Part shown: positions 11,385 to 61,641 of the stretch, one piece after another
Layout of the letters: each line of letters begins with the position of its first letter
Numbering within the stretch: the first letter of the stretch is position 1
NCBI GenBank assembly: GCA_002269645.1
Contig: NIVC01001697.1
Span: 124,001 to 188,000, forward strand
Length of the DNA: 64,000 nt
From: Macrostomum lignano
Taxonomy: Eukaryota
Reading direction: 5' to 3'
Notes under the pieces: model-generated
Told to the model about the DNA's origin: nothing
The model's input: the letters and a program-made list of their open reading frames with translations, nothing else
The model's database searches: none
Made by a program: the position numbers and the translations under genes

Positions 11385-15672
<4,288 letters not shown>

Positions 15673-23900: not shown

Positions 23901-24139
23901 GACGTCGTCACCATCGACACCTTCGATGTTGACTTTCACTTTCAACAGCAGCTGCTGGTTGGCAGCGGCCAGGAAGTCTTTGTCGTTGAGCCCCACTGAC
24001 ATCTGGAGCGTCAGCTGCGACTCGGCTGAGCAATCTGCGGCCTGAGTCTGGAGAGGGTGCTCAACTCGAGGCAGGGACAGTCGGCACCGCCAGAGGCTCT
24101 GTTCGCCCCAGGCATCCGGCTGGCTGCTGAATGGCTCGC
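17986..24139 (-). CDS. Giant (~6.1 kb) exon encoding a ~2,000-aa acidic, Ser/Pro-rich disordered region with ~41 x 25-aa repeats; one -1 frame break near 22905-23004
   Basis: ORFs 22905-24002 and 17986-23004 overlap and have similar composition. The frame stays open upstream to a TTTCCAG acceptor at 24140-24141. The repeat array keeps frame, and its only visible indel is 3 nt. Confidence 0.75.
18765..21850 (-). repeat. Coding 75-bp tandem repeat (DEDLAPVTHQ[TA]SG[ML]SSDLR[PL][PT]SET[KR])n
   Basis: Period 75 read directly. Confidence 0.97.
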
Positions 24140-28925: not shown

Positions 28926-29819
28926 TGTACCCTGTACCGTTCTCTCCTTTATTCTCTCTCATTGCCTCTCTCACATTCTCTCTAATGTCCTTTCTTCTCT
29001 ATTTCCTCTTCTCTCTGTCTTTTTCTCTTTCTCTCTGGCTATTGAGCTAAAAAAGATTGACCGACTCCGCAAAAAAGTAAATTTTTTAATTTTTATGGTT
29101 GCAAACGTATTTTAGATTAAAAAACCACTGCTTGACTCATTCTATTTATTACTATATTACACATACTATAAACTAAAAGTGCAAGCAGATCGAATCAGCT
29201 GGATGCAGCTCAGGCTCCGAGCAGCCATCCAGACTGCAGATTTTCTCAGGCAGTTAAAAAGAGTTTGTTAAAGCCGGTTTTAACTGGAAGCAAGCGTGAG
29301 CCAACCATGCAGTCCTGGCTATGCGATGATGTCGTTAATAATTTAAACGGCAAATGAAACAGCGAGAGAGTTGGGGGGGGGGGACAACGGCATGAAAGGC
29401 TGCAGACGGAGTCTGATTCTCTTCTAACTAAATACAGTAGAAGAGCTACCAGGAGCCATAGCTTGCCCTAGTGTGGGTCCAAGCCTGGGGTATAATGGCT
29501 ATTTTTTTATAACAAAAATTGGATTTATTCAACTTCTCAGCTTGGAAACGTTTGGCATTTCTAGCACAAATTTTTATTCACAATACACATAGTTCTAATA
29601 ATTGACTATTTTCGATCGAATAAAATGCTAGAAAATCTTACTGTAAAAGATGAAGCCTACAGCTGGTTTGGTAGGGTTGTGGCAGACCACAAATCCTATA
29701 GAAACACTATAAGGATTGGACAAAAATTCTATGTAATAATATAATAATTGATCACATCTGCCTAGGGCAGATTTGCAACCTACAGTTCAGCCGGCGCGGC
29801 GCATCTGAAGGCTGCGTAC

Positions 29820-30030
29820 GGCTGTTCAGTCCAAGGACTGGGGGGTCGCCACGCACACCCTTAATTACCCCAGCTAATGCTGTCACCCATTTTACAGCTG
29901 GGTGAACTGAAGCAATGCAGAGTTACGTGTCTTGCTCAAGGACGCAAATTGTTCCAGTGGGATCGGGAATCGAACCCCCGACCTTCAAGTCATGAGTCCG
30001 ACGCTCTAACCACTGGGCTACAACAACCCC
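29820..30030 (-). mobile_element. tRNA-derived CORE-type SINE, unit 1
   Basis: Minus strand has an A box (TAGCCCAGTGG) and B box (GGTTCGATTCC), then CCTTGAGCAAGACACGTAAC...TCAGTTCACCCAGCTGTAAAATGGG, resembling the MIR CORE consensus. Confidence 0.8.
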
Positions 30031-30200
30031 TCTATGTATTACCTGTAAACCTGTACCTGTGACTTTAAAACGATAAGCAGCAAAAACACAAAACTTCATA
30101 CTCTTCTTCTTTGGCATCTTTCCACTCAAGGAATGAACCCTTAGCCTACACACACGCACTTCTGCCCACGCCACACGAGCCCTGCACCTCCTCCGTGAAA

Positions 30201-32386: not shown

Positions 32387-32944
32387 TGAAATCAAGATCG
32401 AATAGAGATTAAAAACGGATCCAGACACCTCCTTGTCGAGGCTCAAGACAAGCCAGCACAAAGCTATTTTGAGCTTGCCACAACTGCCAAAGCTACTCAG
32501 CAGCAATGTAGATACTAAGCTCATTAAAAGCGTTGACTATAGCTACCAGAGTAAAAAAAGTTAAAAAATCCCTTTGTTCGCCCAAAATCGGCTTGAGGCA
32601 GAATGAGTTGATTACTGATGCAGAGGGGAGGCCCGTTTGGCCGCAGCATCCCGCAACTTCCCATCCCATTGAGAATGCTCAGTGCCACCAATTTACTCTC
32701 AGCTGCCGCATGACAGGCAAAGTTTCTCTCCATCCCGAAGCTAATTAGCTACTGTCGTGGGATGGTTTCCATGGAGACGAGGACAACAAATTCTATTCGC
32801 TGGATAGCCCAGCCAGCCAACAGGAAAATGCAGCTGAGACACTATATTTAGAGCTGCAACTGCTCACTGGCTTAGCGACTTTCCTGGCTTAGAAGCATCT
32901 ACCAATCTACCTCGACAACCAAGCCCTGCTGTCAGCGTCTTGGA

Positions 32945-35553
32945 ATGACACTTCACGAAGTTGCCCTAACCTTGGCAGTGCTGATTTCATTCGCTGACGG
33001 TATCTCTTTTGTCTTCGACAAGAGGCCGGACCTGTGCCACAATGCTGCCACTGCAGCTGAGAGTCCGCGCAAACTGCTTGGCGTTGCCGATCCTCGAGTG
33101 TGCGCTGTCGAATGCGCGAGCAACACGACTCTGTGCTCAGTGTATGAGTACTCGCCTAGCAACAGGTCATGCATTCTTGGAAACAGCTGCGACCTGCTGC
33201 ATTTCTGGCAACTCAGCGGCGGACCGGCCTGCAACACGCAGGTGCTGCGAGGCGCAGCAGACTGTGAGACTGCGTCAGTGACTCCGACTAAGACTTCAAT
33301 TCTGACGACCCCAACTTCGACTACCTCGGTTCCGACTGCGGCTACGACCATTACGACTCCGACCACTACGATAACAACTACGACTCCGACTATGACAACC
33401 ACAACGACTCCGGCTACGACAACCACGACTCCGACTACCACAACCACCGCTACTCCGACAACCACCACGACTCCGACTACCACAACCACCACTACTCCAA
33501 CTACCACAACCACTACTACTCCGACAACCACCACGACTCCGACAACCACCACGACTCCGACTACCACAACCACCACGACTCCGACAACCACCACGACTCC
33601 GACAACCACCACGACTCCGACTACCACAACGACTCCAACTACCACAACGACTCCGACAACCACAACGACTCCGACAACCACCACGACTCCGACTACCACA
33701 ACGACTCCAACAACCACAACGACTCCGACTACCACCACGACTCCGACTACCACGACTCCGACAACCACAACGACTCCGACTACCACAACCACCACTACTC
33801 CGACTACCACAACCACCACGACTCCGACTACCACAACCACCACGACTCCGACAACCACAACGACTCCGACAACCACCACGACTCCGACTACCACAACCAC
33901 CACGACTCCGACAACCACCACGACTCCGACTACCACCACGACTCCGACTACCACGACTCCGACAACCACAACGACTCCGACTACCACAACCACCACTACT
34001 CCGACAACCACTACGACTCCGACAACCACTACGACTCCGACAACCACCACGACTCCGACTACAACCACCACACCGACTACGACCACTACGACTTCGACTA
34101 CGACAACCACTACGACCCCGACTACGACCACTACGACAACCACTACAACTCCTGCTCCAATGGTAGTAACAGGTAGGCATAAAATGAATTTTAACATTCG
34201 GAAGTATTAAGAAACAAAAGTTTTTTAAACCGAGCATTCAGCTGGAAATACTCGCAGAAAAAGCTTAAGGTTGGTCTCGCAGTCATACGGCTTAAGCTTT
34301 TCCATAAGGAAATGTTTTTAAACCACTGGTTCTGAGCGCGTCCATAGAGAATCATTCAATCACCCGCAACAAAATTGCTCTCTTAGTTAAAGCTAAATAA
34401 AAAAGAGATATCCAGAGCTGGACAAAGGACAGGCAGCTTAACTTGTGGCTCCTCTTGGATGTGACATCCGCCAGCAGGGGAGACAGCGGCGCCCGCAGAG
34501 CTCATGAAGCCATTTGCATATTTCAAAGACTCAAACATCGTACTTTCAATCTTCAGTTTTTCAGGATTTTTTAGCAAGAAATTTCCTACATATTGAAATT
34601 GAAATTTCGAATTTCAAATGAATCAATTAGGGTCTGTTGTGTCCGAGGCGCACACAAAAGTTTATCAAGCTACATTGTTTCTGAAAATGCTGCACAGGAG
34701 ACTACAGTACATGCATTTTTTAGTGCAGCGTCCATCTAATTTTGTTGTCCAATGAATTTATATTTAGTGCATAACTTCGAATCGTCAATTTCAATTTTCA
34801 GTGCCAACCTCGGGTTCAAAACAACATGGAACACCGGTGGACTACACGCCCCCTGTGGACAATGCCTGCTATCGGTTCGAAGCGCGTGGCGCCAAAGGAG
34901 GTTCCGGCGGAAGCGCAGCCGGTGGCAACGGGGCTATAAAAATTGCCCACTTTGTCTTGACCAGCTCTCAGACGTTGACTATTGTTGTCGGAAAACCCGG
35001 AAACAATGGCAATGGCGGCGGCGGAGGAGGCGGCACTTTTGTCTACACGAGTGGCGGCAGTCCCGTCCTGCTGCTGGCGGCCGGAGGAGGAGGCGGTGGA
35101 GCAGACGTCAACTCGGCTACAGGCAGCCCTGGAATCAGTTCGACCGGCGGCTGCTCCGGATTGGCCAATCAAAACGCGGGAAGCAACCCGTCCGGAGACA
35201 ACTGTGGCGCCGGCGGTGCCGGATGGCAATCACCTGGAACTTCACCAGGGGGCAACCATTGTGGCTCAGTTGGAAGCAATTTGGCAGGAGGTGATGGCGG
35301 ATCAGGAGGCGGCTTTGGTGGCTACGGTGGGGGAGGCGGTGGAGGCCGAACAAATGGAAATAATAAAGCTGGAGGCGGCGGCGGCGGTGGCTACTGCGGC
35401 GGCTCCGGTGGGGCAGAAGACAATCCGGGTGGCGGCGGCTCCAGCTATGCAGCTTCTTCAGCCAAGCAAGTTTCAGGATCGGATGGAGGCAACACCGAAT
35501 CTGATGGGAAGCTAGACATATCTATCGTGGCTAGCTCCGTCTGTACACCGTGA
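32945..35553 (+). CDS. Secreted signal peptide-PAN/apple-like-Thr mucin stalk-ALK/LTK-type glycine-rich domain protein, copy 1 (exons 32945-34172, 34802-35553; ~659 aa)
   Basis: Hydrophobic N-terminus; CAVECASNTTLCSVYEY...C PAN pattern; PTTTT tract; ACAG|GTAGGC donor and TTTTCAG acceptor in phase 1; GAKGG..FVL....L.IVVG..G..GGGGGGTFV...LLLAAGGGGG resembles the ALK/LTK GRD. Confidence 0.85.
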
Positions 35554-37667
35554 GCACCGGTTGAAAACGTTAACATGACTTTATTCACCAAGAACTCATT
35601 GCAAGCAACCCTCTTATGACTTTAGCACAGGGTTTGGCAAACTCTTTTTACCTCAAGGACCAAGAGAACCTAAGCGCATGACTGCGGGCCAGAGAAGGGG
35701 GGAGAAAACAGAATAGTGGGATGGCTATATTGTAAAGTTTAGGAGGCTTTGCGGAATTCATGTGACCCATGGGCGGGAGTCTGCCGACCCCTACCTGCTC
35801 TAGCAACGCTGAGGTGACTCTTGTAAATTTTAACAACTCAAATGCAACGGAGAGGCGATTGTGGAGTACAAAAAACGTGCGTCACGTGATCGTTGTAGAT
35901 TCGTAGAAGAGTCACGTAAGAGTCGTTGCGTTAGCGCTTAACTTTCTACTAACTTTTTGCCTATTATTAACCCTTTTTACCGGTTTTTGCGTGACGCGTG
36001 ACTCTGGGGACCTTGGCCTGGGTACCGTTTTCATCGGGTCAGGTAGAATCTAATCTCAGCAGTCGTGCAGCTGTAGCTCTTGAGATTTGGAGTTCAATAT
36101 CATATGCAGATTTCATGTAAAACTAAATTAGGAGGTAGAAAGTTTTAAGTTTTAATCTTGAAATTTCCAATATTTTGTTTCTTTTCGCTAATTTGTCCTT
36201 TTCCCGAGGTGCACTCAACAAGTTTAGCGAGAAATCAAGTTCAGCCATCGAAAAATAAGTTATTTTTCTAGAATCTTACTACTAGAAGTAGCTCAACTTT
36301 GAGCTATAATTCCCCTATGTTTTTAATGTGACATGTTTTCTGACTAACAAACTTTCTTTTCTGTATAAATTTAAACGACAAAAATTAAAGCAACTTTTTA
36401 TAAACAAAACTGCTGTCAAAATCGAAAATTTAAACTGTTTTTACCTTTTCTCTCAATCGATTCTTATATCGCTATATTTTCTATACAGAATCAAGCTATA
36501 TTTTTACTAGTATGATCCTACTAAACTACATAGTTACTACTAAATGACACTAAATGAATAAACTGTGTGACACCGAAAAAATCTATCCATATTCGATAAA
36601 CTTTTATATTCGTTTTGCCTTTCTTCGGATTTTTTACAATTTTTACGGACCCGATCGTATCGCATATTTTAATTTAGCCGATCGTTTAACAACAACTACA
36701 GAAGGCGGGAGGTGTCAGTCAGAACCTGTAACATTAACAGTCCTGCACATACAGACCGTTATTAATTGTATCAATTGCACGAGGGTTGCGGGCACCTTGG
36801 CGGAGCAGCGCCTTCGGTGACATCGTCACACAATTCCAGCGCTAGCTGGGGCATGCAATTCTACCCATATCGCTGACTCCTGAAAACAGACAAGCGCGCC
36901 AGTGCGGACCTGACTACTTTCTATTCTTCAGGCCAGCACTCTCCCGACCTTATATCGCTAAGAATACGCATGAAACGCTGCGGGGGTCTTTCTCGAAAGC
37001 TACTTACAATGGACCATAGACGTAAATTGTGTTGCTCACACTTACGATTTGCTTAAACATGTCGCAGTTCGGCCTTGCGTAAGTGAGCGCAATTTTATGA
37101 GCTTGCAATTTTGCGAAAGATGCAGTTTCTCGAAATGTTCGCATGTCTATGGTACGTCTTTCGTAAGGTTAATGATCCTAACTCTACGACTGCTCTCGGG
37201 ATCAATCTGAGGGACGATTCTTTAATGCTGCAAGTGACAGCTAAGATCATGGCGACCAAGCGTCAACCCAACTTCCAAGGAACATTAGAAGAAGAAGGAC
37301 GGGACACTTCGTTTCTTGGAAAATTTATTAAAGGCTGATTTTCGCGGAAAAATGTGAGATGGGGGCAAAGAAAAGAAAATTTGGTGGGGGTGTTTGGGCG
37401 GTTTCTAGAACTTTGAATTCCCGCCTTCGTTAACTCGGCACTCGTAAAGCCGGAAAGTTGCACGGATTTGTTCAAGTCGCTTTTCTCCTTTGATACTCCG
37501 TCTGCCGGGTCCTCAATTCCGGGGGTGGGTAGTCGTAATCGCAGTCGAGCGGTCTTGAGCAGGCACGGTCGTTCAGATTGTAGACACAGCGGTCTTGACA
37601 CCGTAAATTTCACTGTTCGCCTATTTGCTTAACTGTTTACTATAACAGTAGTAGAGTACAAGGACCA

Positions 37668-38610
37668 CTCACCTCTCCTCTCTTACCTCTCTTCTCCTCC
37701 CCTCTCCTCTCCTCTCCTCACCTCTCCTCTCCTCACCTCTCTTCTCCTCCCCTCTCCTCACCTCACCTCTCCTCTCCTCACCTCTCCTCTCCTCTCTTCA
37801 CCTCTCTTCTCCTCCCCTCTCCTCTCCTCTCCTCACCTCTCCTCTCCTCACCTCTCTTCTCCTCTCCTCACCTCTCTTCTCCTCCCCTCTCCTCTCCTCA
37901 CCTCTCTTCTCCTCTCCTCACCTCTCTTCTCCCCTCACCTCTCCTCTCCACATCTCTCTTCACCTCTCCTCTCCTCTCCTCTTCTCCCCTCTCCTCTCCT
38001 TACCTCTCCTCTCCTCACCTCTCCTCTCTTCACCTCTCCTCTCCTCTCCTCTTATCTCCTCTCTTCACCTCTCTTCTCCTCACCTCTCTTCTCCTCTCCT
38101 CACCTCTCTTCTCCCCTCACCTCTCCTCTCCCTATCTCTCTTCTCCTCTTCTCCCCTCTCCTCTCCTCTTCTCTCCTCTCTTCACCTCTCCTCTCCTCTC
38201 CTCTCTTCACCTCTCTTCTCCTCTCCTCTCCTCTTCTCCCCTCTCCTCCCCTCTCCTCTCCTCACTTCACCTCTCCTCTCCTCTCCTCTCCTCACCTCTT
38301 TCTCCCCTTACCTCTCCTCTTCTCTCCTCTCTTCACCTCTCCTCTCCTCTCCTCTCTTCACCTCTTTTCTCCCCTTACCTCTCCTCTTCTCCCCTCTCCT
38401 CTCCTCTCTTCACCTCTCTTCTCCTCTCCTCTCCTCTTCTCCCCTCTCCTCCCCTCTCCTCTCCTCACTTCACCTCTCCTCTCCTCTCCTCTCCTCACCT
38501 CTTTCTCCCCTTACCTCTCCTCTTCTCCCCTCTCTTCTCCTCTCTTCACCTCTCTTATCCTCTCCTCTCCTCTTATCTCCTCTCTTCACCTCTCTTCTCA
38601 CCTCTCTTCT
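37668..38610. repeat. Polypyrimidine CT array, unit 2
   Basis: Read directly. Confidence 0.95.
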
Positions 38611-39244
38611 CGAATCAGCTTGATACAGCGCAGGCTCCGAGCAGCCATCCACACTTTGCCAGGTTTTCTCAGGCAGTTAAAAAAGAGTTTGTTAAAGCCG
38701 GTTTTAACTGGAAGCAAGCGTGAGCCAACCATGCTATGCGATTTCATTAATAATTTAAACGGCAAATGAAACAGCGAGAGAGTTGGAGTGGACGACAGCA
38801 TGAAAGGCTGCTCCAGACGGAGTCTGGTTCTCTTCTAACTAAATAGGAGAAGAGCTACCATCAGGAGCCTCTCGTTTGTCCCTATGGTGCGGGGCCAAGC
38901 CTGGAGTGTGGCTATTTTATAACAAAAAATTAGATTCATTCAAATTTTCTCAGCTTGGAAACGTTTGGCATTTGTAGCACAAATTTATTCACATTACAAA
39001 TAGTTATAATTAACTGTTTTCGATCGAATAAAATGCTAGAAAATTTTACTGTAAAAGATGAAGCCTTAGCTACAGTTGATTGTAGGGGTTGTGGCACTAT
39101 AAGGATAATAAGGATAAATCCTTGAAAAACACTATAAGGATAGGACAAAATTTTCCATGTAATAATATGATAATTGATTACTCCTGCCCTAATGGGCAGA
39201 TGTGCAACCGACAGCTCAGCCGCAGCTATTGCGCGGCGCATCTG

Positions 39245-39461
39245 AAGGCTGCGTACGGCTGTTCAGTCCAAGGACTGGGGAGTCGCCACACACCCTTAAT
39301 TACCCCAGCTAATGCTGGCACCCATTTTACAGCTGAGTGAACTGAAGCAATGCAGAGTTAAGTGTCTTGCTCAAGGACACAAATTGTTCCTGTGGGATCG
39401 GGAATCGAACCCCCGACCTTCAAGTCATGAGTCCGACGCTCTAACCACTGGGCTACAGCCC
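39245..39461 (-). mobile_element. tRNA-derived CORE-type SINE, unit 2
   Basis: Paralog of 29820-30030. Confidence 0.8.
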
Positions 39462-40293
39462 TTCTGCATGTATGCATTACCTGTAAACCTGCACCTGCAA
39501 CTTCAAAACCATAAGCAGCAAAAACACAAAACTTCATACTCTTCTTCTTTGGCATCTTTCCACTCAAAGAATGCACCCTTAGCTTACACACGCACTTCTG
39601 CCCACGCCACACGAGCCCCGCACCTCCTCCTCCATGAAAACTTAATTCATAAAACAATCTTGAGGCGAAACTGACATTTTATTTCTGGAAACAAGCCAAA
39701 AAAGTGACCATTTTTATATTGTTGCATTTTATCGAAAAATTTGAAATCAAGATCGAATAGAGATTAAAAACGGATCTAGACACCTCCTTGTCGAGGCTCA
39801 AGACAAGCCAGCACAAAGCTATTTTGAGCTTGCCACAACTGCCAAAGCTACTCAGCAGCAATGTAGATACTAAGCTCATTAAAAGTGTTCTGACAACCAG
39901 ACGAGTAAAAAAAGTTAAAAAATCCCTTTGTTCACCCAAAATCGGCTTGAGGCAGAATGAGTTGATTACTGATGCAGAGGGGAGGCCCGTTTGGCCGCAG
40001 CATCCCGCAACTTCCCATCCCATTGAGAATGCTCAATGCCACCAATTTACTCTCAGCTGCCGCATGACGGGCAAAGTTTCTCTCCATCCCGAAGCTAATT
40101 AGCTACTGTCGTGGGATGGTTTCCATGGAGACGAGGACAACAAAATCGCTGGATAGCCCAGCCAGCCAACAGGAAAATGCAGCTGAGACACTATATTTAG
40201 AGCTGCAATTGCTCACTGGCTTAGCGACTTTCCTGGCTTAGAAGCATCTACCAATCTACCTCGACAACCAAGCCCTGCTGTCAGCGTCTTGGA

Positions 40294-42901
40294 ATGACAC
40301 TTCACGAAGTTGCCCTAACCTTGGCAGTGCTGATTTCATTCGCTGACGGTATCTCTTTTGTCTTCGACAAGAGGCCGGACCTGTGCCACAATGCTGCAAC
40401 TGCAGCTGGCGGTCCGCGCAAACTGCTCGGCGTTGTCGATTCTCGAGTGTGCGCTGTCGAATGCGCGAGCAACACGACTCTGTGCTCAGTGTATGAGTAC
40501 TCGCCTAGCAACAGGTCATGCATTATTGGAAACAGCTGCGACCTGCTGCATTTCTGGCAACTCAGCGGCGGACCGGCCTGCAACACGCAGGTGCTGCGAG
40601 GCGCAGCAGACTGTGAGACTGCGTCAGTGACTCCGACTAAGACTTCAATTCTGACGACCCCAACTTCGACTACCTCGGTTCCGACTGCGGCTACGACCAT
40701 TACGACTCCGACCACTACGATAACAACTACGACTCCGACTATGACAACCACAACGACTCCGGCTACGACAACCACGACTCCGACTACCACAACCACCGCT
40801 ACTCCGACAACCACCACGACTCCGACTACCACAACCACCACTACTCCAACTACCACAACCACTACTACTCCGACAACCACCACGACTCCGACAACCACCA
40901 CGACTCCGACTACCACAACCACCACGACTCCGACAACCACCACGACTCCGACAACCACCACGACTCCGACTACCACAACGACTCCAACTACCACAACGAC
41001 TCCGACAACCACAACGACTCCGACAACCACCACGACTCCGACTACCACAACGACTCCAACAACCACAACGACTCCGACTACCACCACGACTCCGACTACC
41101 ACGACTCCGACAACCACAACGACTCCGACTACCACAACCACCACTACTCCGACTACCACAACCACCACGACTCCGACTACCACAACCACCACGACTCCGA
41201 CAACCACAACGACTCCGACAACCACCACGACTCCGACTACCACAACCACCACGACTCCGACAACCACCACGACTCCGACTACCACCACGACTCCGACTAC
41301 CACGACTCCGACAACCACAACGACTCCGACTACCACAACCACCACTACTCCGACAACCACTACGACTCCGACAACCACTACGACTCCGACAACCACCACG
41401 ACTCCGACTACAACCACCACACCGACTACGACCACTACGACTTCGACTACGACAACCACTACGACCCCGACTACGACCACTACGACAACCACTACAACTC
41501 CTGCTCCAATGGTAGTAACAGGTAGGCATAAAATGAATTTTAACATTCGGAAGTATTAAGAAACAAAAGTTTTTTAAACCGAGCATTCAGCTGGAAATAC
41601 TCGCAGAAAAAGCTTAAGGTTGGTCTCGCAGTCATACGGCTTAAGCTTTTCCATAAGGAAATGTTTTTAAACCACTGGTTCTGAGCGCGTCCATAGAGAA
41701 TCATTCAATCACCCGCAACAAAATTGCTCTCTTAGTTAAAGCTAAATAAAAAAGAGATATCCAGAGCTGGACAAAGGACAGGCAGCTTAACTTGTGGCTC
41801 CTCTTGGATGTGACATCCGCCAGCAGGGGAGACAGCGGCGCCCGCAGAGCTCATGAAGCCATTTGCATATTTCAAAGACTCAAACATCGTACTTTCAATC
41901 TTCAGTTTTTCAGGATTTTTTAGCAAGAAATTTCCTACATATTGAAATTGAAATTTCGAATTTCAAATGAATCAATTAGGGTCTGTTGTGTCCGAGGCGC
42001 ACACAAAAGTTTATCAAGCTACATTGTTTCTGAAAATGCTGCACAGGAGACTACAGTACATGCATTTTTTAGTGCAGCGTCCATCTAATTTTGTTGTCCA
42101 ATGAATTTATATTTAGTGCATAACTTCGAATCGTCAATTTCAATTTTCAGTGCCAACCTCGGGTTCAAAACAACATGGAACACCGGTGACTACACGCCCC
42201 CTGTGGACAATGCCTGCTATCGGTTCGAAGCGCGTGGCGCCAAAGGAGGTTCCGGCGGAAGCGCAGCCGGTGGCAACGGGGCTATAAAAATTGCCCACTT
42301 TGTCTTGACCAGCTCTCAGACGTTGACTATTGTTGTCGGAAAACCCGGAAACAATGGCAATGGCGGCGGCGGAGGAGGCGGCACTTTTGTCTACACGAGT
42401 GGCGGCAGTCCCGTCCTGCTGCTGGCGGCCGGAGGAGGAGGCGGTGGAGCAGACGTCAACTCGGCTACAGGCAGCCCTGGAATCAGTTCGACCGGCGGCT
42501 GCTCCGGATTGGCCAATCAAAACGCGGGAAGCAACCCGTCCGGAGACAACTGTGGCGCCGGCGGTGCCGGATGGCAATCACCTGGAACTTCACCAGGGGG
42601 CAACCATTGTGGCTCAGTTGGAAGCAATTTGGCAGGAGGTGATGGCGGATCAGGAGGCGGCTTTGGTGGCTACGGTGGGGGAGGCGGTGGAGGCCGAACA
42701 AATGGAAATAATAAAGCTGGAGGCGGCGGCGGCGGTGGCTACTGCGGCGGCTCCGGTGGGGCAGAAGACAATCCGGGTGGCGGCGGCTCCAGCTATGCAG
42801 CTTCTTCAGCCAAGCAAGTTTCAGGATCGGATGGAGGCAACACCGAATCTGATGGGAAGCTAGACATATCTATCGTGGCTAGCTCCGTCTGTACACCGTG
42901 A
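40294..42901 (+). CDS. PAN-mucin-GRD gene copy 2 (exons 40294-41521, 42151-42901); 1-bp deletion near 42187 frameshifts exon 2 (pseudogene, truncated form or assembly error)
   Basis: Near-identical to copy 1. CCGGTGAC here versus CCGGTGGAC (copy 1) and CCGGTGAAC (copy 3). The spliced frame stops at TAA 42285-42287. Confidence 0.8.
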
Positions 42902-44949
42902 GCACCGGTTGAAAACGTTAACATGACTTTATTCACCAAGAACTCATTGCAAGCAACCCTCTTATGACTTTAGCACAGGGTTTGGCAAACTCTTTTTACC
43001 TCAAGGACCAAGAGAACCTAAGCGCATGACTGCGGGCCAGAGAAGGGGGGAGAAAACAGAATAGTGGGATGGCTATATTGTAAAGTTTAGGAGGCTTTGC
43101 GGAATTCATGTGACCCATGGGCGGGAGTCTGCCGACCCCTACCTGCTCTAGCAACGCTGAGGTGACTCTTGTAAATTTTAACAACTCAAATGCAACGGAG
43201 AGGCGATTGTGGAGTACAAAAAACGTGCGTCACGTGATCGTTGTAGATTCGTAGAAGAGTCACGTAAGAGTCGTTGCGTTAGCGCTTAACTTTCTACTAA
43301 CTTTTTGCCTATTATTAACCCTTTTTACCGGTTTTTGCGTGACGCGTGACTCTGGGGACCTTGGCCTGGGTACCGTTTTCATCGGGTCAGGTAGAATCTA
43401 ATCTCAGCAGTCGTGCAGCTGTAGCTCTTGAGATTTGGAGTTCAATATCATATGCAGATTTCATGTAAAACTAAATTAGGAGGTAGAAAGTTTTAAGTTT
43501 TAATCTTGAAATTTCCAATATTTTGTTTCTTTTCGCTAATTTGTCCTTTTCCCGAGGTGCACTCAACAAGTTTAGCGAGAAATCAAGTTCAGCCATCGAA
43601 AAATAAGTTATTTTTCTAGAATCTTACTACTAGAAGTAGCTCAACTTTGAGCTATAATTCCCCTATGTTTTTAATGTGACATGTTTTCTGACTAACAAAC
43701 TTTCTTTTCTGTATAAATTTAAACGACAAAAATTAAAGCAACTTTTTATAAACAAAACTGCTGTCAAAATCGAAAATTTAAACTGTTTTTACCTTTTCTC
43801 TCAATCGATTCTTATATCGCTATATTTTCTATACAGAATCAAGCTATATTTTTACTAGTATGATCCTACTAAACTACATAGTTACTACTAAATGACACTA
43901 AATGAATAAACTGTGTGACACCGAAAAAATCTATCCATATTCGATAAACTGAACCGTTTTGCCTTTCTTCGGATTTTTTAAAAATTTTTTGCGGACCCGA
44001 TCGTATCGCATATTTTAGTTTAGCCGATCGTTTAACAACAACTACAGAAGGGGGGAGGTGTCAGTCAGAACCTTTAACATTAACAGTCCTGCACATACAG
44101 ACCGTCATTAATTATATCAATTGCACGAGGGTTGCGGGCACCTTGGCGGAGCAACGCCTTCGGCGGTGACATCGTCACACAATTCCAGCGCTAGCTGGGG
44201 CATGCAATTCTACCCATATCGCTGACTCCTGAAAACAGACAAGCGCGCCAGTGCGGCCCTGCAGACTACTTTCTATTCTTCAGGCCAGCACTCTCCCGAC
44301 CTTATATCGCTAAGATTACGCATGATACAATGGACCATAGACGTAAGTTGTGATGGCCACACAGTTTGACTATGCGTAAGAGTGATCGCAACTTTACGAA
44401 AGATGCAGTTTCTCGAAATGTTCGCATGTCTATGGTACGTCTTTCGTAAGGTTAATGATCCTAACTCTACGACTGCTCTCGGGATCAATCTGAGGGACGA
44501 TTCTTTAATGCTGCAAGTGACAGCTAAGATCATGGCGACCAAGCGTCAACCCAACTTCCAAGGACCATTAGAAGAAGAAGGACGGGACACTTCGTTTCTT
44601 GGAAAATTTATTAAAGGCTGATTTTCGCGGAAAAATGTGAGATGGGGGCAAAGAAAAGAAAATTTGGTGGGGGTGTATGGGCGGTTTCTAGAACTTTGAA
44701 TTCCCGCCTTCGTTAACTCGGCACTCGTAAAGCCGGAAAGTTGCACGGATTTGTTCAAGTCGCTTTTCTCCTTTGATACTCCGTCTGCCGGGTCCTCAAT
44801 TCCGGGGGTGGGTAGTCGTAATCGCAGTCGAGCGGTCTTGAGCAGGCACGGTCGTTCAGATTGTAGACACAGCGGTCTTGACAACGTAAATTTCACTGTT
44901 CGCCTATTTGCTTAACTGTTTACTATAACAGTAGTAGAGTACAAGGACC

Positions 44950-46770
44950 ACTCACCTCTCCTCTCTTCACCTCTCTTCTCCTCCCCTCTACTCTCCTCCC
45001 CTCTCCTCTCCTCTCCTCACCTCTCCTCTCCTCACCTCTCTTCTCCTCTCCTCTCTTCATCTCTCCTCACCTCTCTTCACCTCTCCTCTCTTCACCTCTC
45101 TTCTCCTCCCCTCTCCTCTCCTCTCCTCACCTCTCCTCTCCTCACCTCTCTTCTCCTCTCCTCACCTCTCTTCTCCTCTCCTCTCTTCATCTCTCCTCTC
45201 CTCACCTCTCTTCTCCTCTCCTCTCTTCTCCTCTCCTCTCTTCACCTCTTTTTACCTCTCTTCCCCTCTCCTCACCTCTCTTCTCCCCTCACCTCTGACT
45301 TACTTGACTTAGCTGCAGGGCGGTCCGAAGACGCAGTGGGGAGGCGAGCGTCGCCCATTCCGCTAATCCCTGAAAGACCAGCATAGGCTAGGGCGCGGGG
45401 CCGGTCAGGGAGGTCTGCCGGTCCTGTCTGCAGCGTTGTCTTCGGTGGGGAAGACGGAGGCTCGCTTGGTGGCCCGGAGGAACCGGATGAGCCGTGGGAT
45501 GTTCTCGGGCCGACAAACGTCGTCTAGGGACGGGTTGGGCCCGAGGTGGTTGAGCCGGTCTCGGTTGAAGGCCGGGCAGTAGCAGACGAAGTGCTTGGCG
45601 TCTTCGTTCTCGAGGTTGCAGAAAGGGCAGAGTTCGCTCCGGCGGGCACTTCGGAGGAAACAGTGCCTGGCAAAGCAACCGTGACCTGTGAAGGCCATAG
45701 TGAGAGCGCGGATATATTTTCGATTTTCGTTCAAAAGGATTCTCCGCAGCTTGAGGGACGGATTGGGCACTGCCGCACGAGATTGGCGGCAGTTGGAGAT
45801 ACCATCCCCTCACCTCTCCTCTCCACATCTCTCTTCTCTCCTCTCCTCTCCTCTTCTCCCCTCTCCTCTCCTTACCTCTGCTCTCCTCACCTCTCCTCTC
45901 TTCACCTCTCCTCTCCTCTCCTTTTATCTCCTCTCTTCACCTCTCCTCTCATTTCCTCGTATCTCCTCTCTTCACCTCTCTTCTCCTCTCCTCACCTCTC
46001 TTCTCTCCCCTCTCCTCTCCTCTCCTCTTCTCTCCTCTCCTCACCTCTCTTCTCCTCTCCTCTCTTCATCTCTCCTCTCCTCACCTCTCTTCTCCTCCCC
46101 TCTCCTCTCCTCTCCTCTCCTCACCTCCCCTCTCCTCACCTCTCCTCTCCTCTCCTCTCCTCACCTCTCTTCTCCTCTCCTCACCTCTCTTCTCCTCCCC
46201 TCTCCTCTCCTCACCTCTCTTCTCCTCTCCTCACCTCTCTTCTCCCCTCACCTCTCCTCTCCACATCTCTCTTCTCTCCTCTCCTCTCCTCTTCTCCCCT
46301 CTCCTCTCCTTACCTCTCCTCTCCTCACCTCTCCTCTCTTCACCTCTCCTCTCCTCTCCTCTTATCTCCTCTCTTCACCTCTCTTCTCCTCACCTCTCTT
46401 CTCCTCTCCTCACCTCTCTTCTCCCCTCACCTCTCCTCTCCCTATCTCTCTTCTCCTCTTCTCCCCTCTCCTCTCCTCGTCTCCCCTATCTTCACCTCTC
46501 CTCTCCTCTCCTCTCTTCACCTCTTTTCTCCCCTTACCTCTCCTCTTCTCCCTCTCCTCTCCTCTCTTCACCTCTCTTCTCCTCTCCTCTCCTCTTCTCC
46601 CCTCTCCTCCCCTCTCCTCTCCTCACTTCACCTCTCCTCTCCTCTCCTCTCCTCACCTCTTTCTCCCCTTACCTCTCCTCTTCTCCCCTCTCTTCTCCTC
46701 TCTTCACCTCTCTTATCCTCTCCTCTCCTCTTATCTCCTCTCTTCACCTCTCTTCTCACCTCTCTTCTCG
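44950..46770. repeat. Polypyrimidine CT array, unit 3, interrupted by a LINE fragment
   Basis: Read directly. Confidence 0.95.
45297..45804 (-). mobile_element. 3'-terminal fragment (508 bp) of an I/Loa/R1-like LINE with 13-bp TSD TCCCCTCACCTCT
   Basis: LTMAFTGHGCFARH..CPFCNLENEDAKHFVCYCPAF C-terminal Cys/His motif, 3'UTR and AAGTC-type tail. Duplicated 13-mer at 45284-45296 and 45805-45817. Empty site near 37930 in unit 2. Clade assignment is approximate. Confidence 0.82.
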
Positions 46771-47399
46771 AATCAGCTTGATACAGCGCAGGCTCCGAGC
46801 AGCCATCCACACTTTGCCAGGTTTTCTCAGGCAGTTAAAAAAGAGTTTGTTAAAGCCGGTTTTAACTGGAAGCAAGCGTGAGCCAACCATGCTATGCGAT
46901 TTCATTAATAATTTAAACGGCAAATGAAACAGCGAGAGAGTTGGAGTGGACGACAGCATGAAAGGCTGCTCCAGACGGAGTCTGGTTCTCTTCTAACTAA
47001 ATAGGAGAAGAGCTACCATCAGGAGCCTCTCGTTTGTCCCTATGGTGCGGGGCCAAGCCTGGAGTGTGGCTATTTTATAACAAAAAATTAGATTCATTCA
47101 AATTTTCTCAGCTTGGAAACGTTTGGCATTTGTAGCACAAATTTATTCACATTACAAATAGTTATAATTAACTGTTTTCGATCGAATAAAATGCTAGAAA
47201 ATCTTACTGTAAAAGATGAAGCCTTAGCTACAGTTGATGGTAGGGGTTGTGGCACTATAAGGATAATAAGGATAAATCCTTGAAAAACGCTATAAGGATA
47301 GGACAAAATTTTCCATGTAATAATATGATAATTGATTACTCCTGTCCTAATGGGCAGATGTGCAACCGACAGCTCAGCCGCAGCTATTGCTGTTACGGT

Positions 47400-47615
47400 C
47401 ACGGCTGTTCAGTCCAAGGACTGGGGGTCCCACACACACCCTCAATTACCCCAGCTAGCTAATGGCACCCATTTTACAGCTGGGTGAACTGAAGCAACGC
47501 AGAGTTATAGTGTAAGTGTCTTGCTCAAGGACGCAAATTGTTCCAGTTGGATCGGGAATCGAACCCCTGACCTTCAAGTCGTGAGTCCGACGCTCTAACC
47601 ACTAGGCTACAACCC
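47400..47615 (-). mobile_element. tRNA-derived CORE-type SINE, unit 3
   Basis: Paralog of 29820-30030. Confidence 0.8.
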
Positions 47616-48419
47616 TCAACATGTATGCATTACCTGTAAACCTGTACCTGCAACTTCAAAACGATAAGCAGCAAAAACACAAAACTTCATACTCTTCTTC
47701 ATTGGCATCTTTCCACTCAAAGAACCCTTAGCCTACATGCACTTCTGCCAACACCACACGAGCCCCGCACCTCCTCCTCCATGTTGAAGTGCAATGAAAA
47801 CTTTATTCATGAAACAATCTCGAGGCCATTTTTATATTGTTGACTTATATCGAAAAATTTGAAATCAAGATCGAATAGAGATTAAAAACGGATCCAGACA
47901 CTTCCTTGTCGAGGCTCAAGACAAGTCAGCACAAAGCTATTTTGAGCTTGCCACAACTGCAAAAGCTACTCAGCAGCAATACTTAGTAAGCTCATTAAAA
48001 GCTTTCTGACAACCAGAGTAAAAAAAAGTTAAAAAATCCCTTTGTTCGCCCAAAATCGGCTTGAGTCAGAATGAGTTGATTACTGATGCAGAGTTGAGGC
48101 CCGTTTGGCCGCAGCATCCTGCAACTTGCCATCATCTCATCGAGAATGCTTATAATGCCACCAATTTACTCTCAACTGCCGCATGACAGGCAAAGTTTCT
48201 CTCTATATTCCGAAGCTAATTAGCTACTGTCTTGGGATGGTTTCCATGGAGACGAGGACAACAAATTCTATTCGCTGGATAGCCCAGCCAGCCAACAGGA
48301 AAATGCAGCTGAGACACTATATTTAGAGCTGCAATTACTCACTGGCTTAGCGACTTTCCTGGCTTAGAAGCATCTACCAATCTACCTCGATAACCAAGCC
48401 CTGCTGTCAGCGTCTTGGA

Positions 48420-50796
48420 ATGACACTTCACGAAGTTGCCATAACCTTGGCAGTGCTGATTTCATTCGCCGACGGTACATCTTTTGTCTTCGACAAGAGG
48501 CCGGACCTGTGCCACAATGCTGCCACTGCAGCTGAGAGTCCGCGCAAACTGCTTGGCGTTGCCGATCCTCGAGTGTGCGCTGTCGAATGCGCGAGCAACA
48601 CGACTCTGTGCTCAGTGTATGAGTACTCGCCTAGCAACAGGTCATGCATTCTTGGAAACAGCTGCGACCTGCTGCTTTTCTGGCAACACAGCGGCGGACC
48701 GGCCTGCAACACGCAGGTGCTGCGAGGCGCAGCAGACTGTGAGACTGCGTCAGTGACTCCGACTACGAGTTCAATTCTGACGACCTCGACTCCGACTGCG
48801 ACTCCGACCACTACAACTCCGACTACGACCACCACCACGACCCCGACGGCGACCACTACGACTCCGACTCCGACCACCACCACGACTCCGACTACTACAA
48901 CCACCACGACTCCAACTACGACCACCACGACTCCGACTACGACCACCACCACGACTCCGACTACGACCACTACGACTCCTACTACGACCACTACAACTCC
49001 GACTACGACCACTACGACTCCGACTACGACCACTACGACTCCGACTACGACCACTACAACTCCGACTACGACCACCACCACGACTCCGACTACGACCACC
49101 ATGACTCCGACTACGACCACTACAACTCCGACTACGACCACCACCACGACTCCGACTACGACCACCACGACTCCGACTACGACCACTACGACTCCGACTA
49201 CAACCACCACGACTCCGACTACTACAACCACCACGACTCCGACTACAACCACGACTCCGACTACGACCACCACCACGACTCCGACTACTACAACCACCAC
49301 GACTCCAACTACGACCACCACGACTCCGACTACTACAACCACCACAACTCCGACTACTACAACCACCACGACTCCAACTACGACCACCACGACTCCGACT
49401 ACGACCACCACGACTCCGACTACGACCACTACGACAACCACTACAACTCCTGCTCCAATGGTAGTAACAGGTAGGCATAAAAAGAATTTTAGCATACGGA
49501 AGTATTAAGAAGCAAAAGTTTATATTTAAACCGAGCCTTCAGCTGGAAATACTCGCAGAAAAAGCTTAAGGATGGTCTCGCAGTCATACGGCTTAAACTT
49601 TTCCATGATGAAATGTTTTTAAACCACTGGTTCTGAGCTCGTCCATAGAGACTCCCTCAATCACCCCCAACAAAAATTGCTATCTTACTTAAAGCTAAAT
49701 AAAAAAGAGGTACGAGCTATCCGAAACTGGACGAAAGACAGGCAGCTCAACTTGTGGCTCCTCTTGGATGACATCCCCGCCAGCAGGGGAGACAGGGGCG
49801 CCCGCAGAGCTCAATGTTCAGTTTTTCAGGATTTTTTGCTAGAAATTTCCTACATACTGAAATTGAAATTTCGAATTTCAAATGAATCAAGGGTCTGTTT
49901 ATCAAGTTTATAAAGTTTATCAAGCTGCATTTTCTCTGAAAATGCTACAGAGAAAAGACTAAGTACATGTATTTTTAGTGCAGCGTCCATCTAATTTTGT
50001 TGTCCAATGAATTTATATTTATTGCATAACTTCGAATCGTCAATTTAAATTTTCAGTGCCAACCTCGGGTTCAAAACAACATGGAACACCGGTGAACTAC
50101 ACGCCCCCTGTGGACAATGCCTGCTATCGGTTCGAAGCGCGTGGTGCCAAAGGAGGTTCCGGAAGTGCAGCCGGTGGCAACGGGGCTATAAAAATTGCCC
50201 ACTTTATCCTAAACAGCTCTCAGACGTTGACTATTGTTGTCGGAAAACCCGGAAACGATGGCAATGGCGGCGGCGGAGGAGGCGGCACTTTCGTCTACAC
50301 GAGTGGCGGCAGTCCCGTCCTGCTGCTGGCGGCCGGAGGAGGAGGAGGCGGAGGAGACGTCAGCTCGGCTACAGGCAGCCCTGGAAACAGTTCGACCGGC
50401 GGCTGCTCCGGAAACGCGGGAAGCAACCCGTCCGGAAATAACTGCGGCGCCGGCGGTGCAGGATGGCAATCACCTGGAACTCCACCCGGGGGCAGCCAGT
50501 GTGGCACCGTTGGAAGTAACTTGGCAGGAGGTGATGGCGGATCAGGAGGCGGCTTTGGTGGCTACGGTGGTGGAGGCGGTGGAGGCCGAACAACTGGTGG
50601 ACCAAATAAGGCCGGAGGCGGCGGCGGCGGTGGCTACTGCGGCGGCTCCGGCGGCCCATCGGGCAGTCCAGGTGGCGGCGGCTCCAGCTATGCAGCTGCT
50701 TCAGCTAAGCAAGTTTCAGGAACGGATGGAGGCAACACCGAATCTGATGGGAAGGTAGACATATCTATTGTGGCTGGCTCTTTCTGCACACCATGA
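48420..50796 (+). CDS. PAN-mucin-GRD gene copy 3 (exons 48420-49470, 50057-50796; ~596 aa), intact and more diverged
   Basis: Same splice sites and phase as copy 1, a shorter and different Thr tract, and only in-frame indels in the GRD. Confidence 0.85.

Positions 50797-53412: not shown

Positions 53413-61641
<8,229 letters not shown>

What the first reader, a model, noticed from the sequence alone, without database searches (positions are those of the whole stretch)
32945..50796. Triplicated secreted PAN-mucin-ALK/LTK glycine-rich-domain protein with no transmembrane or kinase part
Seen: the ORF track shows two separate ORFs per unit, but a phase-1 GT-AG intron joins them in copies 1 and 3. 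The product is a signal peptide, a Cys-rich PAN/apple-like module, ~240-300 residues of PTTTT, and a ~240-aa Gly-rich domain ending at a stop with no hydrophobic anchor. Known: the ALK/LTK glycine-rich domain forms polyglycine-II helix bundles that bind ligand and dimerise, and PAN domains bind glycans or proteins. Inference: a two-headed secreted molecule on an O-glycosylated spacer, locally amplified. Possible roles are a mucus or adhesive cross-linker, a soluble decoy for ALK-type ligands, or a microbe-binding effector. I do not know this architecture from a described family.
Basis: partly seen in the sequence, partly recalled or inferred. Interest (0 to 1): 0.78.

Follow-up and report, generated by a model that had tools for sequence, protein, structure and literature searches.

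The report
Secreted flatworm PAN–mucin–glycine-rich-domain gene triplet
Three tandem genes in a Macrostomum flatworm encode a secreted protein that joins a PAN/apple module, through a long threonine-rich mucin stalk, to the unusual glycine-rich ligand-binding domain otherwise known in animals from the ALK/LTK receptor kinases, here with no membrane anchor or kinase; its function has not been tested.

Summary
Three tandem units (about 7.3 to 8.1 kb each) each carry a two-exon gene. Copy 1 gives 659 aa and copy 3 gives 596 aa. Copy 2 has a 1-bp deletion that stops it at 454 aa, before the glycine-rich domain (GRD).

- **Intron:** it is a phase-1 GT-AG intron. An annotated M. lignano paralog has a phase-1 intron at the same place, a public gene model crosses the same junction, and the intron is 38% GC against 56-60% in the exons.
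- **C-terminal domain:** it is a true ALK/LTK-type GRD. A Macrostomum-only profile hits LTK (1e-8) and ALK (1.5e-4) and nothing else in the PDB. The AlphaFold model (pLDDT 83) matches only ALK/LTK/SCD-2 GRD structures in Foldseek.
- **N-terminus:** it is a hydrophobic leader followed by a PAN/apple module.
- **No membrane or kinase part:** there is no transmembrane segment, EGF domain or kinase.
- **Family:** the genes belong to an uncharacterised M. lignano family of Apple+GRD proteins listed only as hypothetical proteins. The 236-295-aa mucin insert is the variant feature.
- **Function:** this is inferred only. The most likely role is an extracellular two-headed mucin that bridges or binds matrix, glycan or microbial ligands. 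A decoy for ALK ligands is unlikely.

This is a new variant of a known kind, of moderate interest.

The parts
32387..32944 (+). Conserved 5' flank and putative promoter of copy 1. It includes a TATA-like TATATTTAG at 32843-32851, 94-102 nt before the ATG. Equivalent regions are 39742-40293 (copy 2) and 47860-48419 (copy 3).
   Evidence: 96% (copy 2) and about 92-96% (copy 3) identity. The last 150 nt are almost identical in all three copies. Promoter function is inferred.
32945..33001 (+). Copy 1 signal-peptide-like leader (MTLHEVALTLAVLISFADG). The likely cleavage site is after SFA or ADG.
   Evidence: This is the only strong hydropathy peak in the protein (KD19 = 2.14 at residues 6-24). It aligns with the hydrophobic leaders of paralogs P0024 and P0025. 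No SignalP run was possible.
33002..33286 (+). Copy 1 PAN/apple module (residues 20-114 of the precursor, which has 8 Cys in residues 1-114).
   Evidence: Pfam PAN_1 E=6e-5, 23.2 bits against a gathering score of 21.4. BLASTP to the Apple domain of M. lignano P0024 gives 2e-15. The AF2 model has pLDDT 78, and its Foldseek top hits are HGF N domain, plasminogen PAN, SML-2, MIC4 and leech antiplatelet protein, though with E of 0.08 or more.
33287..34172 (+). Copy 1 PTS/mucin linker (295 aa, 79% Thr, 14% Pro) running to the phase-1 donor ACAG|GTAGGC.
   Evidence: The 18-24-nt degenerate repeats use all four Thr codons.
34173..34801 (+). Copy 1 intron (629 nt, GT-AG, phase 1).
   Evidence: GC is 38% against 56-60% in the exons. 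Annotated paralog P0024 has a phase-1 intron at the homologous position. Public model P0001 reads straight across the same junction.
34802..35553 (+). Copy 1 exon 2: the complete ALK/LTK-type glycine-rich (TNF-like + polyglycine) domain plus the TGA stop.
   Evidence: Profile A1 hits ALK 9e-31, LTK 2e-30 and SCD-2 3e-20. Macrostomum-only profile A4 hits LTK 1e-8 and ALK 1.5e-4. AF2 gives pLDDT 83 and pTM 0.85. The Foldseek top 21 are all ALK/LTK/SCD-2 GRD, with E down to 3e-10 and TM 0.6-0.69.
40294..41521 (+). Copy 2 exon 1 (leader, PAN, mucin). It differs from copy 1 at 8 nucleotides, all in the PAN part.
42151..42901 (+). Copy 2 exon 2. It is identical to copy 1 except for a 1-bp deletion at 42188. 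This causes a frameshift and a premature TAA at 42285-42287.
   Evidence: The deletion is either a very young null allele or an assembly indel. The surrounding 3.4 kb is otherwise identical to copy 1.
48420..49470 (+). Copy 3 exon 1 (leader, PAN, 236-aa mucin).
49471..50056 (+). Copy 3 intron (586 nt, GT-AG, phase 1).
   Evidence: It is 93% identical to the copy 1 intron over aligned bases.
50057..50796 (+). Copy 3 exon 2 (246-aa GRD plus TGA stop).
   Evidence: 88% aa identity to copy 1. It is 97% identical (95 of 98) to the in-frame part of M. lignano A0A1I8GWL7.
33177..36602 (.). A 3,426-bp tract identical to 40526-43950 in unit 2 apart from the single-base deletion. This is a recent gene-conversion tract or an assembly artefact.
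   Evidence: The flanks on both sides differ by about 1-3%.

Best explanation
The region is a tandem array of three young paralogs in a Macrostomum flatworm genome, either M. lignano or a very close relative. Each gene has two exons. Exon 1 encodes a cleavable leader, one PAN/apple module and a 236-295-residue Thr/Pro mucin stalk. Exon 2 encodes a complete compact ALK/LTK-type glycine-rich domain (a TNF-like beta-sandwich carrying a polyglycine-II lattice) and then stops.

The product is a soluble secreted glycoprotein with two different binding heads held apart by a stiff O-glycosylated spacer. It belongs to a Macrostomum family of Apple+GRD proteins in which the two domains are normally adjacent. 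The mucin stalk was inserted at the exon 1 end of the domain boundary.

The most likely mode of action is as a component of mucus or the apical extracellular matrix. The PAN head would bind a glycan or matrix partner and the GRD head a second partner, bridging or coating them. This is analogous to the PAN-PTS-ZP matrix protein LET-653.

Shown here: gene structure, domain identities, absence of a transmembrane segment and kinase, purifying selection on the GRD, and family membership. Inferred: secretion, O-glycosylation, binding, and the tissue and role.
For: - **Gene model:**. The intron's position and phase are conserved in the annotated paralog. Public model P0001 crosses the same junction. 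Exon and intron GC differ.
- **GRD:**
- **PAN:**
- **No transmembrane segment:** the highest hydropathy after the leader is 1.36, in a GRD beta-strand.
- **C-terminal end:** all Macrostomum paralogs end a few residues after the last GRD strand at a conserved Cys.
- **No kinase in range:** the next gene downstream is mitochondrial ATP synthase b on the opposite strand.
- **Selection:** GRD dN/dS is 0.33.
- **Family:** P0024, P0169, P0025 and P0048 are Apple+GRD proteins. P0034 and P0001 are fragments of mucin-bearing relatives. The Macrostomum GRDs form one clade.
- **Analogy:** LET-653 uses its PAN domains and a second domain to bind two different matrix pools (PMC4970718).
- **GRD context elsewhere:** bacterial GRD relatives are surface or secreted proteins with PEP-CTERM or T9SS sorting signals, and one sits beside a contractile-injection-system tape-measure gene. 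This fits the GRD being an extracellular binding module.
Against: - There is no expression, localisation or binding data. No paper was found on this family.
- The window GRD alone does not reach Pfam's PF12810 threshold (12 bits against 24.5).
- The PAN fold matches are weak in E-value (0.08 or more).
- No canonical AATAAA lies within 600 nt of the stop, so the 3' end is not defined.
- One of the three copies is broken as assembled.
- The PAN part shows too few differences to test selection (2 synonymous, 4 non-synonymous).
Confidence: 0.5

Rival explanations
1. Microbe-binding or humoral immune effector. The PAN head acts as a lectin and the bacterial-type GRD head recognises microbial surfaces, with the mucin stalk presenting them in mucus to agglutinate or trap microbes.
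For: - PAN/apple lectins are among the fold hits (SML-2 bound to galactose, MIC4).
- With Gly-Gly columns excluded, the GRD is about as similar to bacterial surface GRDs as to its own paralogs (22-26% against 22-30%).
- Tandem amplification, gene conversion and variable repeat length are typical of fast-evolving defence genes.
Against: GRD dN/dS of 0.33 shows no sign of diversifying selection. There is no induction or binding data. This reading overlaps with the main explanation and differs only in the ligand.
Confidence: 0.2
2. Organ-specific glandular secretion of the reproductive or adhesive system (prostate or seminal fluid, cement or shell gland, or adhesive footprint) rather than general mucus.
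For: The genes are young, tandemly duplicated, secreted and repeat-rich. The family is seen so far only in Macrostomum among the top 150 relatives. From general knowledge, such genes are common among Macrostomum tail- and gland-specific transcripts.
Against: There is no expression evidence at all. The gene and protein identifiers and domain names were absent from the searchable literature.
Confidence: 0.15
3. Soluble decoy or antagonist that sequesters the ligand of the worm's own ALK-type receptor.
For: The domain is homologous to, and predicted to share the fold of, the ligand-binding TG/GRD region of ALK and LTK.
Against: - Identity to human ALK outside Gly-Gly columns is 14%, rank 166 of 168 relatives.
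- Single-sequence phmmer against ALK gives only 13.9 bits.
- The roughly 32-residue insert present in ALK's GRD is absent.
- The Macrostomum GRDs form their own clade, apart from ALK.
- From general knowledge, ALKAL ligands are vertebrate-specific.
- A 236-295-aa mucin stalk and a PAN head are not expected for a simple decoy.
Confidence: 0.05
4. Non-functional or artefactual array: decaying pseudogenes, or an assembly duplication of one or two real genes.
For: Copy 2 is frameshifted. Units 1 and 2 share a 3.4-kb tract identical but for that one base, which could reflect assembly or polishing problems in a repeat-rich region.
Against: Copies 1 and 3 have intact ORFs, conserved splice sites and conserved promoters. 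The GRD is under purifying selection. The flanks of the identical tract differ by 1-3%, and unit 2 has its own 0.5-kb insert, so the units are distinct loci. A related public gene model exists.
Confidence: 0.05

Closest known systems
Macrostomum lignano 'Apple domain-containing' hypothetical proteins (PAA61162.1/PAA91998.1 = BOX15_Mlig019850g1/g2; PAA57358.1 = BOX15_Mlig028980g1; UniProt A0A1I8HF87, A0A1I8IMG2; fragments A0A1I8GWL7 and A0A1I8J935)
   Same: They share the leader, a homologous PAN/apple module (36% identity, E 2e-15) and a C-terminal GRD (44-51% identity). They have the same phase-1 intron at the domain boundary and the same ending at a conserved C-terminal Cys. Their GRDs form one clade.
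   Different: In the full-length annotated members, PAN and GRD are separated by only about 20-30 residues. The window genes carry a 236-295-aa Thr/Pro mucin stalk. None of these proteins has been studied. The fragments that do show a mucin are frame-shifted, mis-named models ('Loricrin', 'receptor protein-tyrosine kinase').
ALK/LTK receptor tyrosine kinases (TG/GRD ectodomain; PDB 7LRZ, 7NX1, 7N00, 7LIR)
   Same: The glycine-rich domain is homologous and has the same predicted fold: TNF-like beta strands at both ends and long Gly runs between them.
   Different: The window genes have no EGF-like module, transmembrane helix or kinase. The domain is compact, about 235 aa, without ALK's roughly 32-residue insert. 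Non-Gly identity is only 14%. The domain is encoded by one exon and preceded by PAN plus mucin rather than MAM/LDLa.
Bacterial PF12810 / Gly_rich_2 surface proteins (PEP-CTERM, T9SS or multi-domain; e.g. P0002, P0006, P0039, P0029, P0030)
   Same: They have a compact GRD of the same length and motif order (GA.GG ... GGGGGGTFVY ... AGGGGG ... GGAGW ... GGFGGGGG ... GGGGGGYSGG ... GGGGSY ... GY..I), with 40-46% identity including Gly. They are extracellular.
   Different: They are prokaryotic, with bacterial sorting signals and no PAN module or mucin. Their function is also unknown.
C. elegans LET-653 (signal peptide, PAN x2, PTS mucin region, ZP domain)
   Same: It is a secreted, anchor-less protein with an N-terminal PAN domain, a PTS region and a second matrix-binding domain. 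Its two ends bind different matrix pools (PMC4970718).
   Different: The second domain is a ZP domain, not a GRD. The resemblance is in architecture only, with no homology beyond the PAN domain.

Membership tests
ALK/LTK-type glycine-rich domain superfamily (Pfam PF12810) | Single-sequence match to the Pfam HMM at or above the gathering score (24.5 bits) | tested here: not met
   Copy 1 scores 12 bits (E 0.2) although it covers positions 7-203 of the 243-position model. Copy 3 gives no hit. Paralogs P0169 (24.9 bits) and P0034 (40.8 bits) do pass. Compositional bias correction depresses the scores.
ALK/LTK-type glycine-rich domain superfamily (Pfam PF12810) | Profile-level homology to solved ALK/LTK GRDs over the whole domain | tested here: met
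   Profile A1 hits ALK 9e-31, LTK 2e-30 and SCD-2 3e-20. Macrostomum-only profile A4 hits LTK 1e-8 and ALK 1.5e-4, with no other PDB family at E up to 0.01.
ALK/LTK-type glycine-rich domain superfamily (Pfam PF12810) | Fold: TNF-like beta-sandwich plus glycine-rich polyglycine-II lattice | tested here: met
   The AF2 model has pLDDT 83 and pTM 0.85. Beta strands lie only at residues 12-93 and 223-242, with confident non-alpha, non-beta structure between them. The Foldseek top 21 hits are all ALK/LTK/SCD-2 GRD, with TM 0.5-0.69. This is a prediction. The PGII geometry itself was not measured.
ALK/LTK receptor tyrosine kinase family | Transmembrane helix after the ectodomain | tested here: not met
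   A stop codon follows 8-10 residues after the last GRD strand. The highest KD19 hydropathy outside the leader is 1.36.
ALK/LTK receptor tyrosine kinase family | Cytoplasmic tyrosine kinase domain, and an EGF-like module after the GRD | tested here: not met
   No such ORF lies between the copies or downstream. The spacers hold microsatellites and LINE fragments, and the next gene is ATP synthase b on the minus strand. The annotated paralogs end at the same point.
PAN/apple domain | Pfam PAN_1 at or above the gathering score, plus a conserved Cys framework | tested here: met
   PAN_1 scores 23.2 bits against a cut-off of 21.4, though only over model positions 14-51 of 76. Six Cys are invariant across five Macrostomum sequences. 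UniProt names the paralogs 'Apple domain-containing'.
PAN/apple domain | PAN fold | tested here: inconclusive
   The AF2 model has pLDDT 78, from an alignment of only 5 sequences. The Foldseek best hits are overwhelmingly PAN proteins, but with E of 0.08-1 and TM of 0.4-0.54.
Secreted mucin (PTS-domain glycoprotein) | Long tandem-repeat Pro/Thr/Ser domain | tested here: met
   The linkers are 295 and 236 aa, with 79-81% Thr and 14% Pro, built from 18-21-nt repeats.
Secreted mucin (PTS-domain glycoprotein) | Signal peptide and dense O-glycosylation | not testable with these tools
   The leader is inferred from hydropathy and from small residues at -3/-1 (SFA|DG). No SignalP or NetOGlyc run was possible, and there is no glycoproteomic data.
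Macrostomum Apple+GRD family (unnamed) | Homologous PAN and GRD in the same order, a shared phase-1 intron at the boundary, and a shared C-terminal Cys | tested here: met

The most novel reading that the evidence does not exclude
Macrostomum may carry a lineage-specific, expanding family of soluble GRD proteins. On this reading its GRD does not derive from the animal ALK receptor. It derives instead from a compact 'bacterial-type' GRD, either acquired horizontally or retained from an ancient non-receptor lineage, and was joined to a PAN exon by phase-1 exon shuffling. If so, it would be a genetically tractable animal GRD outside a receptor kinase. It would offer a direct way to ask what the polyglycine-II lattice binds, and where the ALK ligand-binding domain came from.
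Probability: 0.2. Interest if true: 0.75.

Novelty: new variant of a known kind. Interest (0 to 1): 0.55.

Why it matters
In animals, the GRD has been studied only as the cytokine-binding part of ALK and LTK. It is one of very few natural polyglycine-II lattices. Here the same domain is a free-standing secreted head, fused to a PAN module and a mucin stalk, in a flatworm where RNAi, in situ hybridisation and transgenesis are routine.

That would allow three things:

- A test of what a GRD does outside receptor signalling.
- Comparison with the many uncharacterised bacterial GRD surface proteins.
- A test of the origin of the ALK ectodomain.

For annotation, the locus is represented in public protein sets only by frame-shifted, mis-named fragments ('Loricrin', 'receptor protein-tyrosine kinase'). 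These names should not be propagated.

Tried and rejected
- **Exact look-ups:** P0001 and the exon 2 ORF are not on record in public assemblies.
- **PAN-domain searches of the 5.8-billion-protein set:** the single sequence found only P0001. The five-sequence profile found nothing, not even its own members, so that null result is uninformative.
- **Literature:** nothing relevant came from Macrostomum with glycine-rich, ALK, apple domain, mucin/gland or single-cell atlas, or from the gene and UniProt identifiers. The primary ALK structure paper was not held.
- **Fourth copy upstream:** rejected. Only the spacer (28159-30194) is repeated there, interrupted by a LINE.
- **Alternative acceptor rescuing copy 2:** rejected. 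No nearby AG restores the frame.
- **Antisense ORFs:** the long 'VVVVG' and 'RSRGG' ORFs over the mucin repeats are by-products of the repeat.
- **Origin of the GRD:** a distance tree was built, but it cannot decide between horizontal transfer and ancient descent. It only shows that the Macrostomum GRDs form one clade and are far from ALK.


Full report
**Observation**

The ORF track and the raw sequence show three tandem units: 32387-39741, 39742-47859 and 47860 to about 52460. Each unit has a 5' ORF encoding a hydrophobic leader, a Cys-rich module and a very long PTTTT(T) run. About 0.6 kb further on there is a second ORF rich in glycine.

In copies 1 and 3 a GT-AG intron in phase 1 joins the two ORFs (ACAG|GTAGGC ... 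TTTTCAG|TG; 629 and 586 nt). The spliced products are 659 and 596 aa and end at TGA.

Copy 2 has the same splice sites but lacks one G at 42188. It therefore reads 13 codons into exon 2, shifts frame and stops at 42285-42287, giving 454 aa without the Gly-rich domain. tblastn finds no further copies in the window.

**Support for the splice model**

- The intron is 38% GC, while the flanking exons are 56-60%.
- An annotated paralog in the M. lignano assembly GCA_002269645.1 is P0024, BOX15_Mlig019850. It has exactly two exons, separated by a phase-1 GT-AG intron of 744 nt. That intron lies 6 residues before the conserved 'GTP..Y.P' motif; the window intron lies 8 residues before it.
- The only close public protein is UniProt A0A1I8GWL7 (P0001), auto-named 'Loricrin'. 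It is a frame-shifted gene model that reads from the end of the PAN module through a collapsed mucin and straight across the same junction (...NS|ANLGF...) into the Gly-rich domain. Its in-frame part is 95/98 identical to copy 3.
- That identity places the window in Macrostomum lignano or a very close relative.
- I could not inspect RNA-seq reads.

**The C-terminal domain**

On its own the sequence is too biased for standard thresholds. Pfam ALK_LTK_GRD gives 12 bits (cut-off 24.5), although the match spans model positions 7-203 of 243. phmmer against the PDB puts ALK chains on top, but at E of about 0.4.

Three further tests settle the question:

- The domain aligns end to end (37-45% identity) with about 280-aa bacterial proteins that share every motif block. 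A profile of that alignment hits ALK (9e-31), LTK (2e-30) and C. elegans SCD-2 (3e-20) over the whole GRD.
- A profile built only from the five Macrostomum GRDs hits LTK (1e-8) and ALK (1.5e-4), and nothing else in the PDB at E up to 0.01.
- The AlphaFold2 model has pLDDT 83 and pTM 0.85. Beta strands lie only at residues 12-93 and 223-242, with confident non-regular structure between them. Foldseek matches it to the 21 ALK/LTK/SCD-2 GRD chains and to no other family (E down to 3e-10, TM 0.5-0.69). The next hits are Gly-rich phage tail-fibre tips at E above 0.02.

The domain is the compact form. It lacks the roughly 32-residue insert visible in the ALK alignment. An N-terminal and a C-terminal Cys are invariant in all Macrostomum members.

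**The N-terminal part**

Residues 6-24 give the only strong hydropathy peak (2.14). SFA|DG offers small residues at positions -3 and -1. The leader aligns with those of the paralogs.

The following module passes Pfam PAN_1 (23.2 bits against 21.4, a partial match). It is 36% identical to the Apple domain of P0024 (E 2e-15) and keeps six invariant Cys. Its model (pLDDT 78) finds almost only PAN/apple structures: HGF N domain, plasminogen, Sarcocystis SML-2, Toxoplasma MIC4 and leech antiplatelet protein. These hits have weak E-values of 0.08-1.

The linker is 295 aa in copy 1 and 236 aa in copy 3, with 79-81% Thr and 14% Pro. It is encoded by degenerate 18-21-nt repeats that use all four Thr codons.

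**No membrane or kinase part**

- After the leader, the highest 19-residue hydropathy is 1.36, inside a GRD beta strand.
- The stop follows the last GRD strand by 8-10 residues in all three copies and in the paralogs P0024, P0025 and P0048.
- The spacers between copies hold CT-rich microsatellites and LINE fragments, followed by the next copy's conserved promoter and ATG.
- Downstream of copy 3, the next gene is mitochondrial ATP synthase subunit b on the other strand.
- No canonical AATAAA lies within 600 nt of the stop, so the 3' end is undefined.

**Family and evolution**

An exhaustive HMMER scan of 1.84 billion representative proteins gave 671 hits at E up to 1e-3. The closest named ones are all M. 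lignano:

- P0024/P0169 (PAA61162.1, PAA91998.1, A0A1I8HF87), P0025 (PAA57358.1) and P0048 (A0A1I8IMG2). All are 'Apple domain-containing protein' or 'hypothetical protein', with a leader, PAN and GRD but no mucin.
- P0034 (A0A1I8J935), a fragment that starts with a frame-shifted mucin and is auto-named 'receptor protein-tyrosine kinase'.

A PAN HMM found the PAN module only in these Macrostomum entries among the 172 proteins retrieved. In a distance tree of 169 GRDs, the Macrostomum domains form one exclusive clade.

With Gly-Gly columns excluded, copy 1 is 22-30% identical to its paralogs, 22-26% to bacterial-type GRDs and 14% to human ALK, which ranks 166th of 168. The family is therefore not a recent truncation of the worm's ALK. 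Whether it came by transfer from bacteria or from an old non-receptor lineage cannot be decided here.

Non-kinase GRD proteins do occur sporadically in other eukaryotes:

- P0022, from a transcript-like contig encoding a 2116-aa protein with five GRD matches, EGF-like modules and a weak match to a transmembrane-segment model.
- Three proteins of the fungus Drechmeria coniospora, where the authors reported no hint of function (PMC4859500).

**Array dynamics**

Copies 1 and 3 differ by dS 0.15 and dN 0.05 in the GRD (omega 0.33). They are 98% identical in the PAN part, where only 2 synonymous and 4 non-synonymous changes exist.

Units 1 and 2 share a 3,426-bp tract (33177-36602 = 40526-43950) that is identical but for the deleted G. 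The flanks differ by 1-3%, and unit 2 has its own insert of about 0.5 kb. This looks like recent gene conversion. The lone indel may be a very young null mutation or a polishing error.

**Mechanism**

What is shown is an anchor-less two-domain protein with a long PTS spacer, under purifying selection, in a locally amplified family.

From established knowledge, PAN/apple modules bind glycans or proteins. PTS domains become densely O-glycosylated extended rods. The ALK/LTK GRD is a ligand-binding and dimerising module built on a polyglycine-II lattice.

I infer a secreted two-headed mucin that bridges or coats extracellular partners in mucus or the apical matrix. LET-653 (signal peptide, PAN, PTS, ZP) is a worked example in which the two ends bind two different matrix pools (PMC4970718).

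Microbe binding is a plausible special case, and an organ-specific glandular secretion is equally open. A decoy for ALK ligands is unlikely given the distance from ALK and the extra PAN-mucin parts.

**Verdict**

The domain combination exists in databases only as unnamed or mis-named models and has no literature. The mucin-bearing form is a new variant. Function is unknown and testable in a tractable animal. Interest is moderate (0.55).

Noticed in passing
window 17986-24002 (-): A very long ORF (1672 aa plus an upstream 365-aa ORF) made of about 50 tandem 24-residue acidic repeats (PSETKDEDLAPVTHQTSGMSSDLR). The 365-aa part has no Pfam match. The opposite strand carries a 1049-aa by-product ORF.
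   Followed up: partly
window 28159-29035, 37668-38599, 45808-46757: A CT-rich microsatellite of about 0.9 kb (CTCTCCTCTC) sits in the spacer before each gene copy and produces spurious 'LSSPLLSSP' ORFs. The spacer upstream of copy 1 (28159-30194) is homologous to the inter-unit spacers, so the duplicated unit begins there.
   Followed up: partly
window 30617-32056 (-) and 45297-45807: A non-LTR retrotransposon reverse-transcriptase ORF (RVT_1, E 2.8e-30) is inserted in the spacer just upstream of copy 1. A separate insert of about 0.5 kb, with a LINE-tail-like ORF (no Pfam match), is present only in unit 2.
   Followed up: partly
window 33177-36602 vs 40526-43950: A 3.4-kb tract is perfectly identical between units 1 and 2 apart from the frameshifting 1-bp deletion, with 1-3% divergence on both sides. 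It is either a gene-conversion tract or an assembly or polishing artefact.
   Followed up: partly
window 414-2734 (-), 11732-12370 (+), 53413-56172 (-): The neighbouring genes are ordinary animal genes: a GH38 lysosomal alpha-mannosidase, a CYRIA/B (FAM49) Rac1-binding protein, and mitochondrial ATP synthase subunit b. A '[19 protein letters not shown]' minisatellite lies within the mannosidase region (1080-2099).
   Followed up: partly
L006 539-3760 (ENA ERZ27264225 k141_2849): A 237-aa bacterial GRD-only protein (P0037) lies about 0.9 kb upstream of a gene with a contractile-injection-system tape-measure domain (CIS_TMP). This suggests a tail-fibre-like receptor-binding role for some bacterial GRDs.
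   Followed up: no
L005 294-6644 (Logan SRR33984645 contig 12746): A transcript-like contig encodes a 2116-aa protein (P0022) with five GRD matches, EGF-like modules and a weak match to a transmembrane-segment model near the C-terminus, but no Pfam kinase match. It is another non-kinase GRD protein, apparently eukaryotic, from an unidentified organism.
   Followed up: no
window 53882-54873 and 59651-60764: Further simple-repeat tracts (the 'IYLS' microsatellite and a 'VTSPVN' minisatellite) generate long spurious ORFs on both strands.
   Followed up: no
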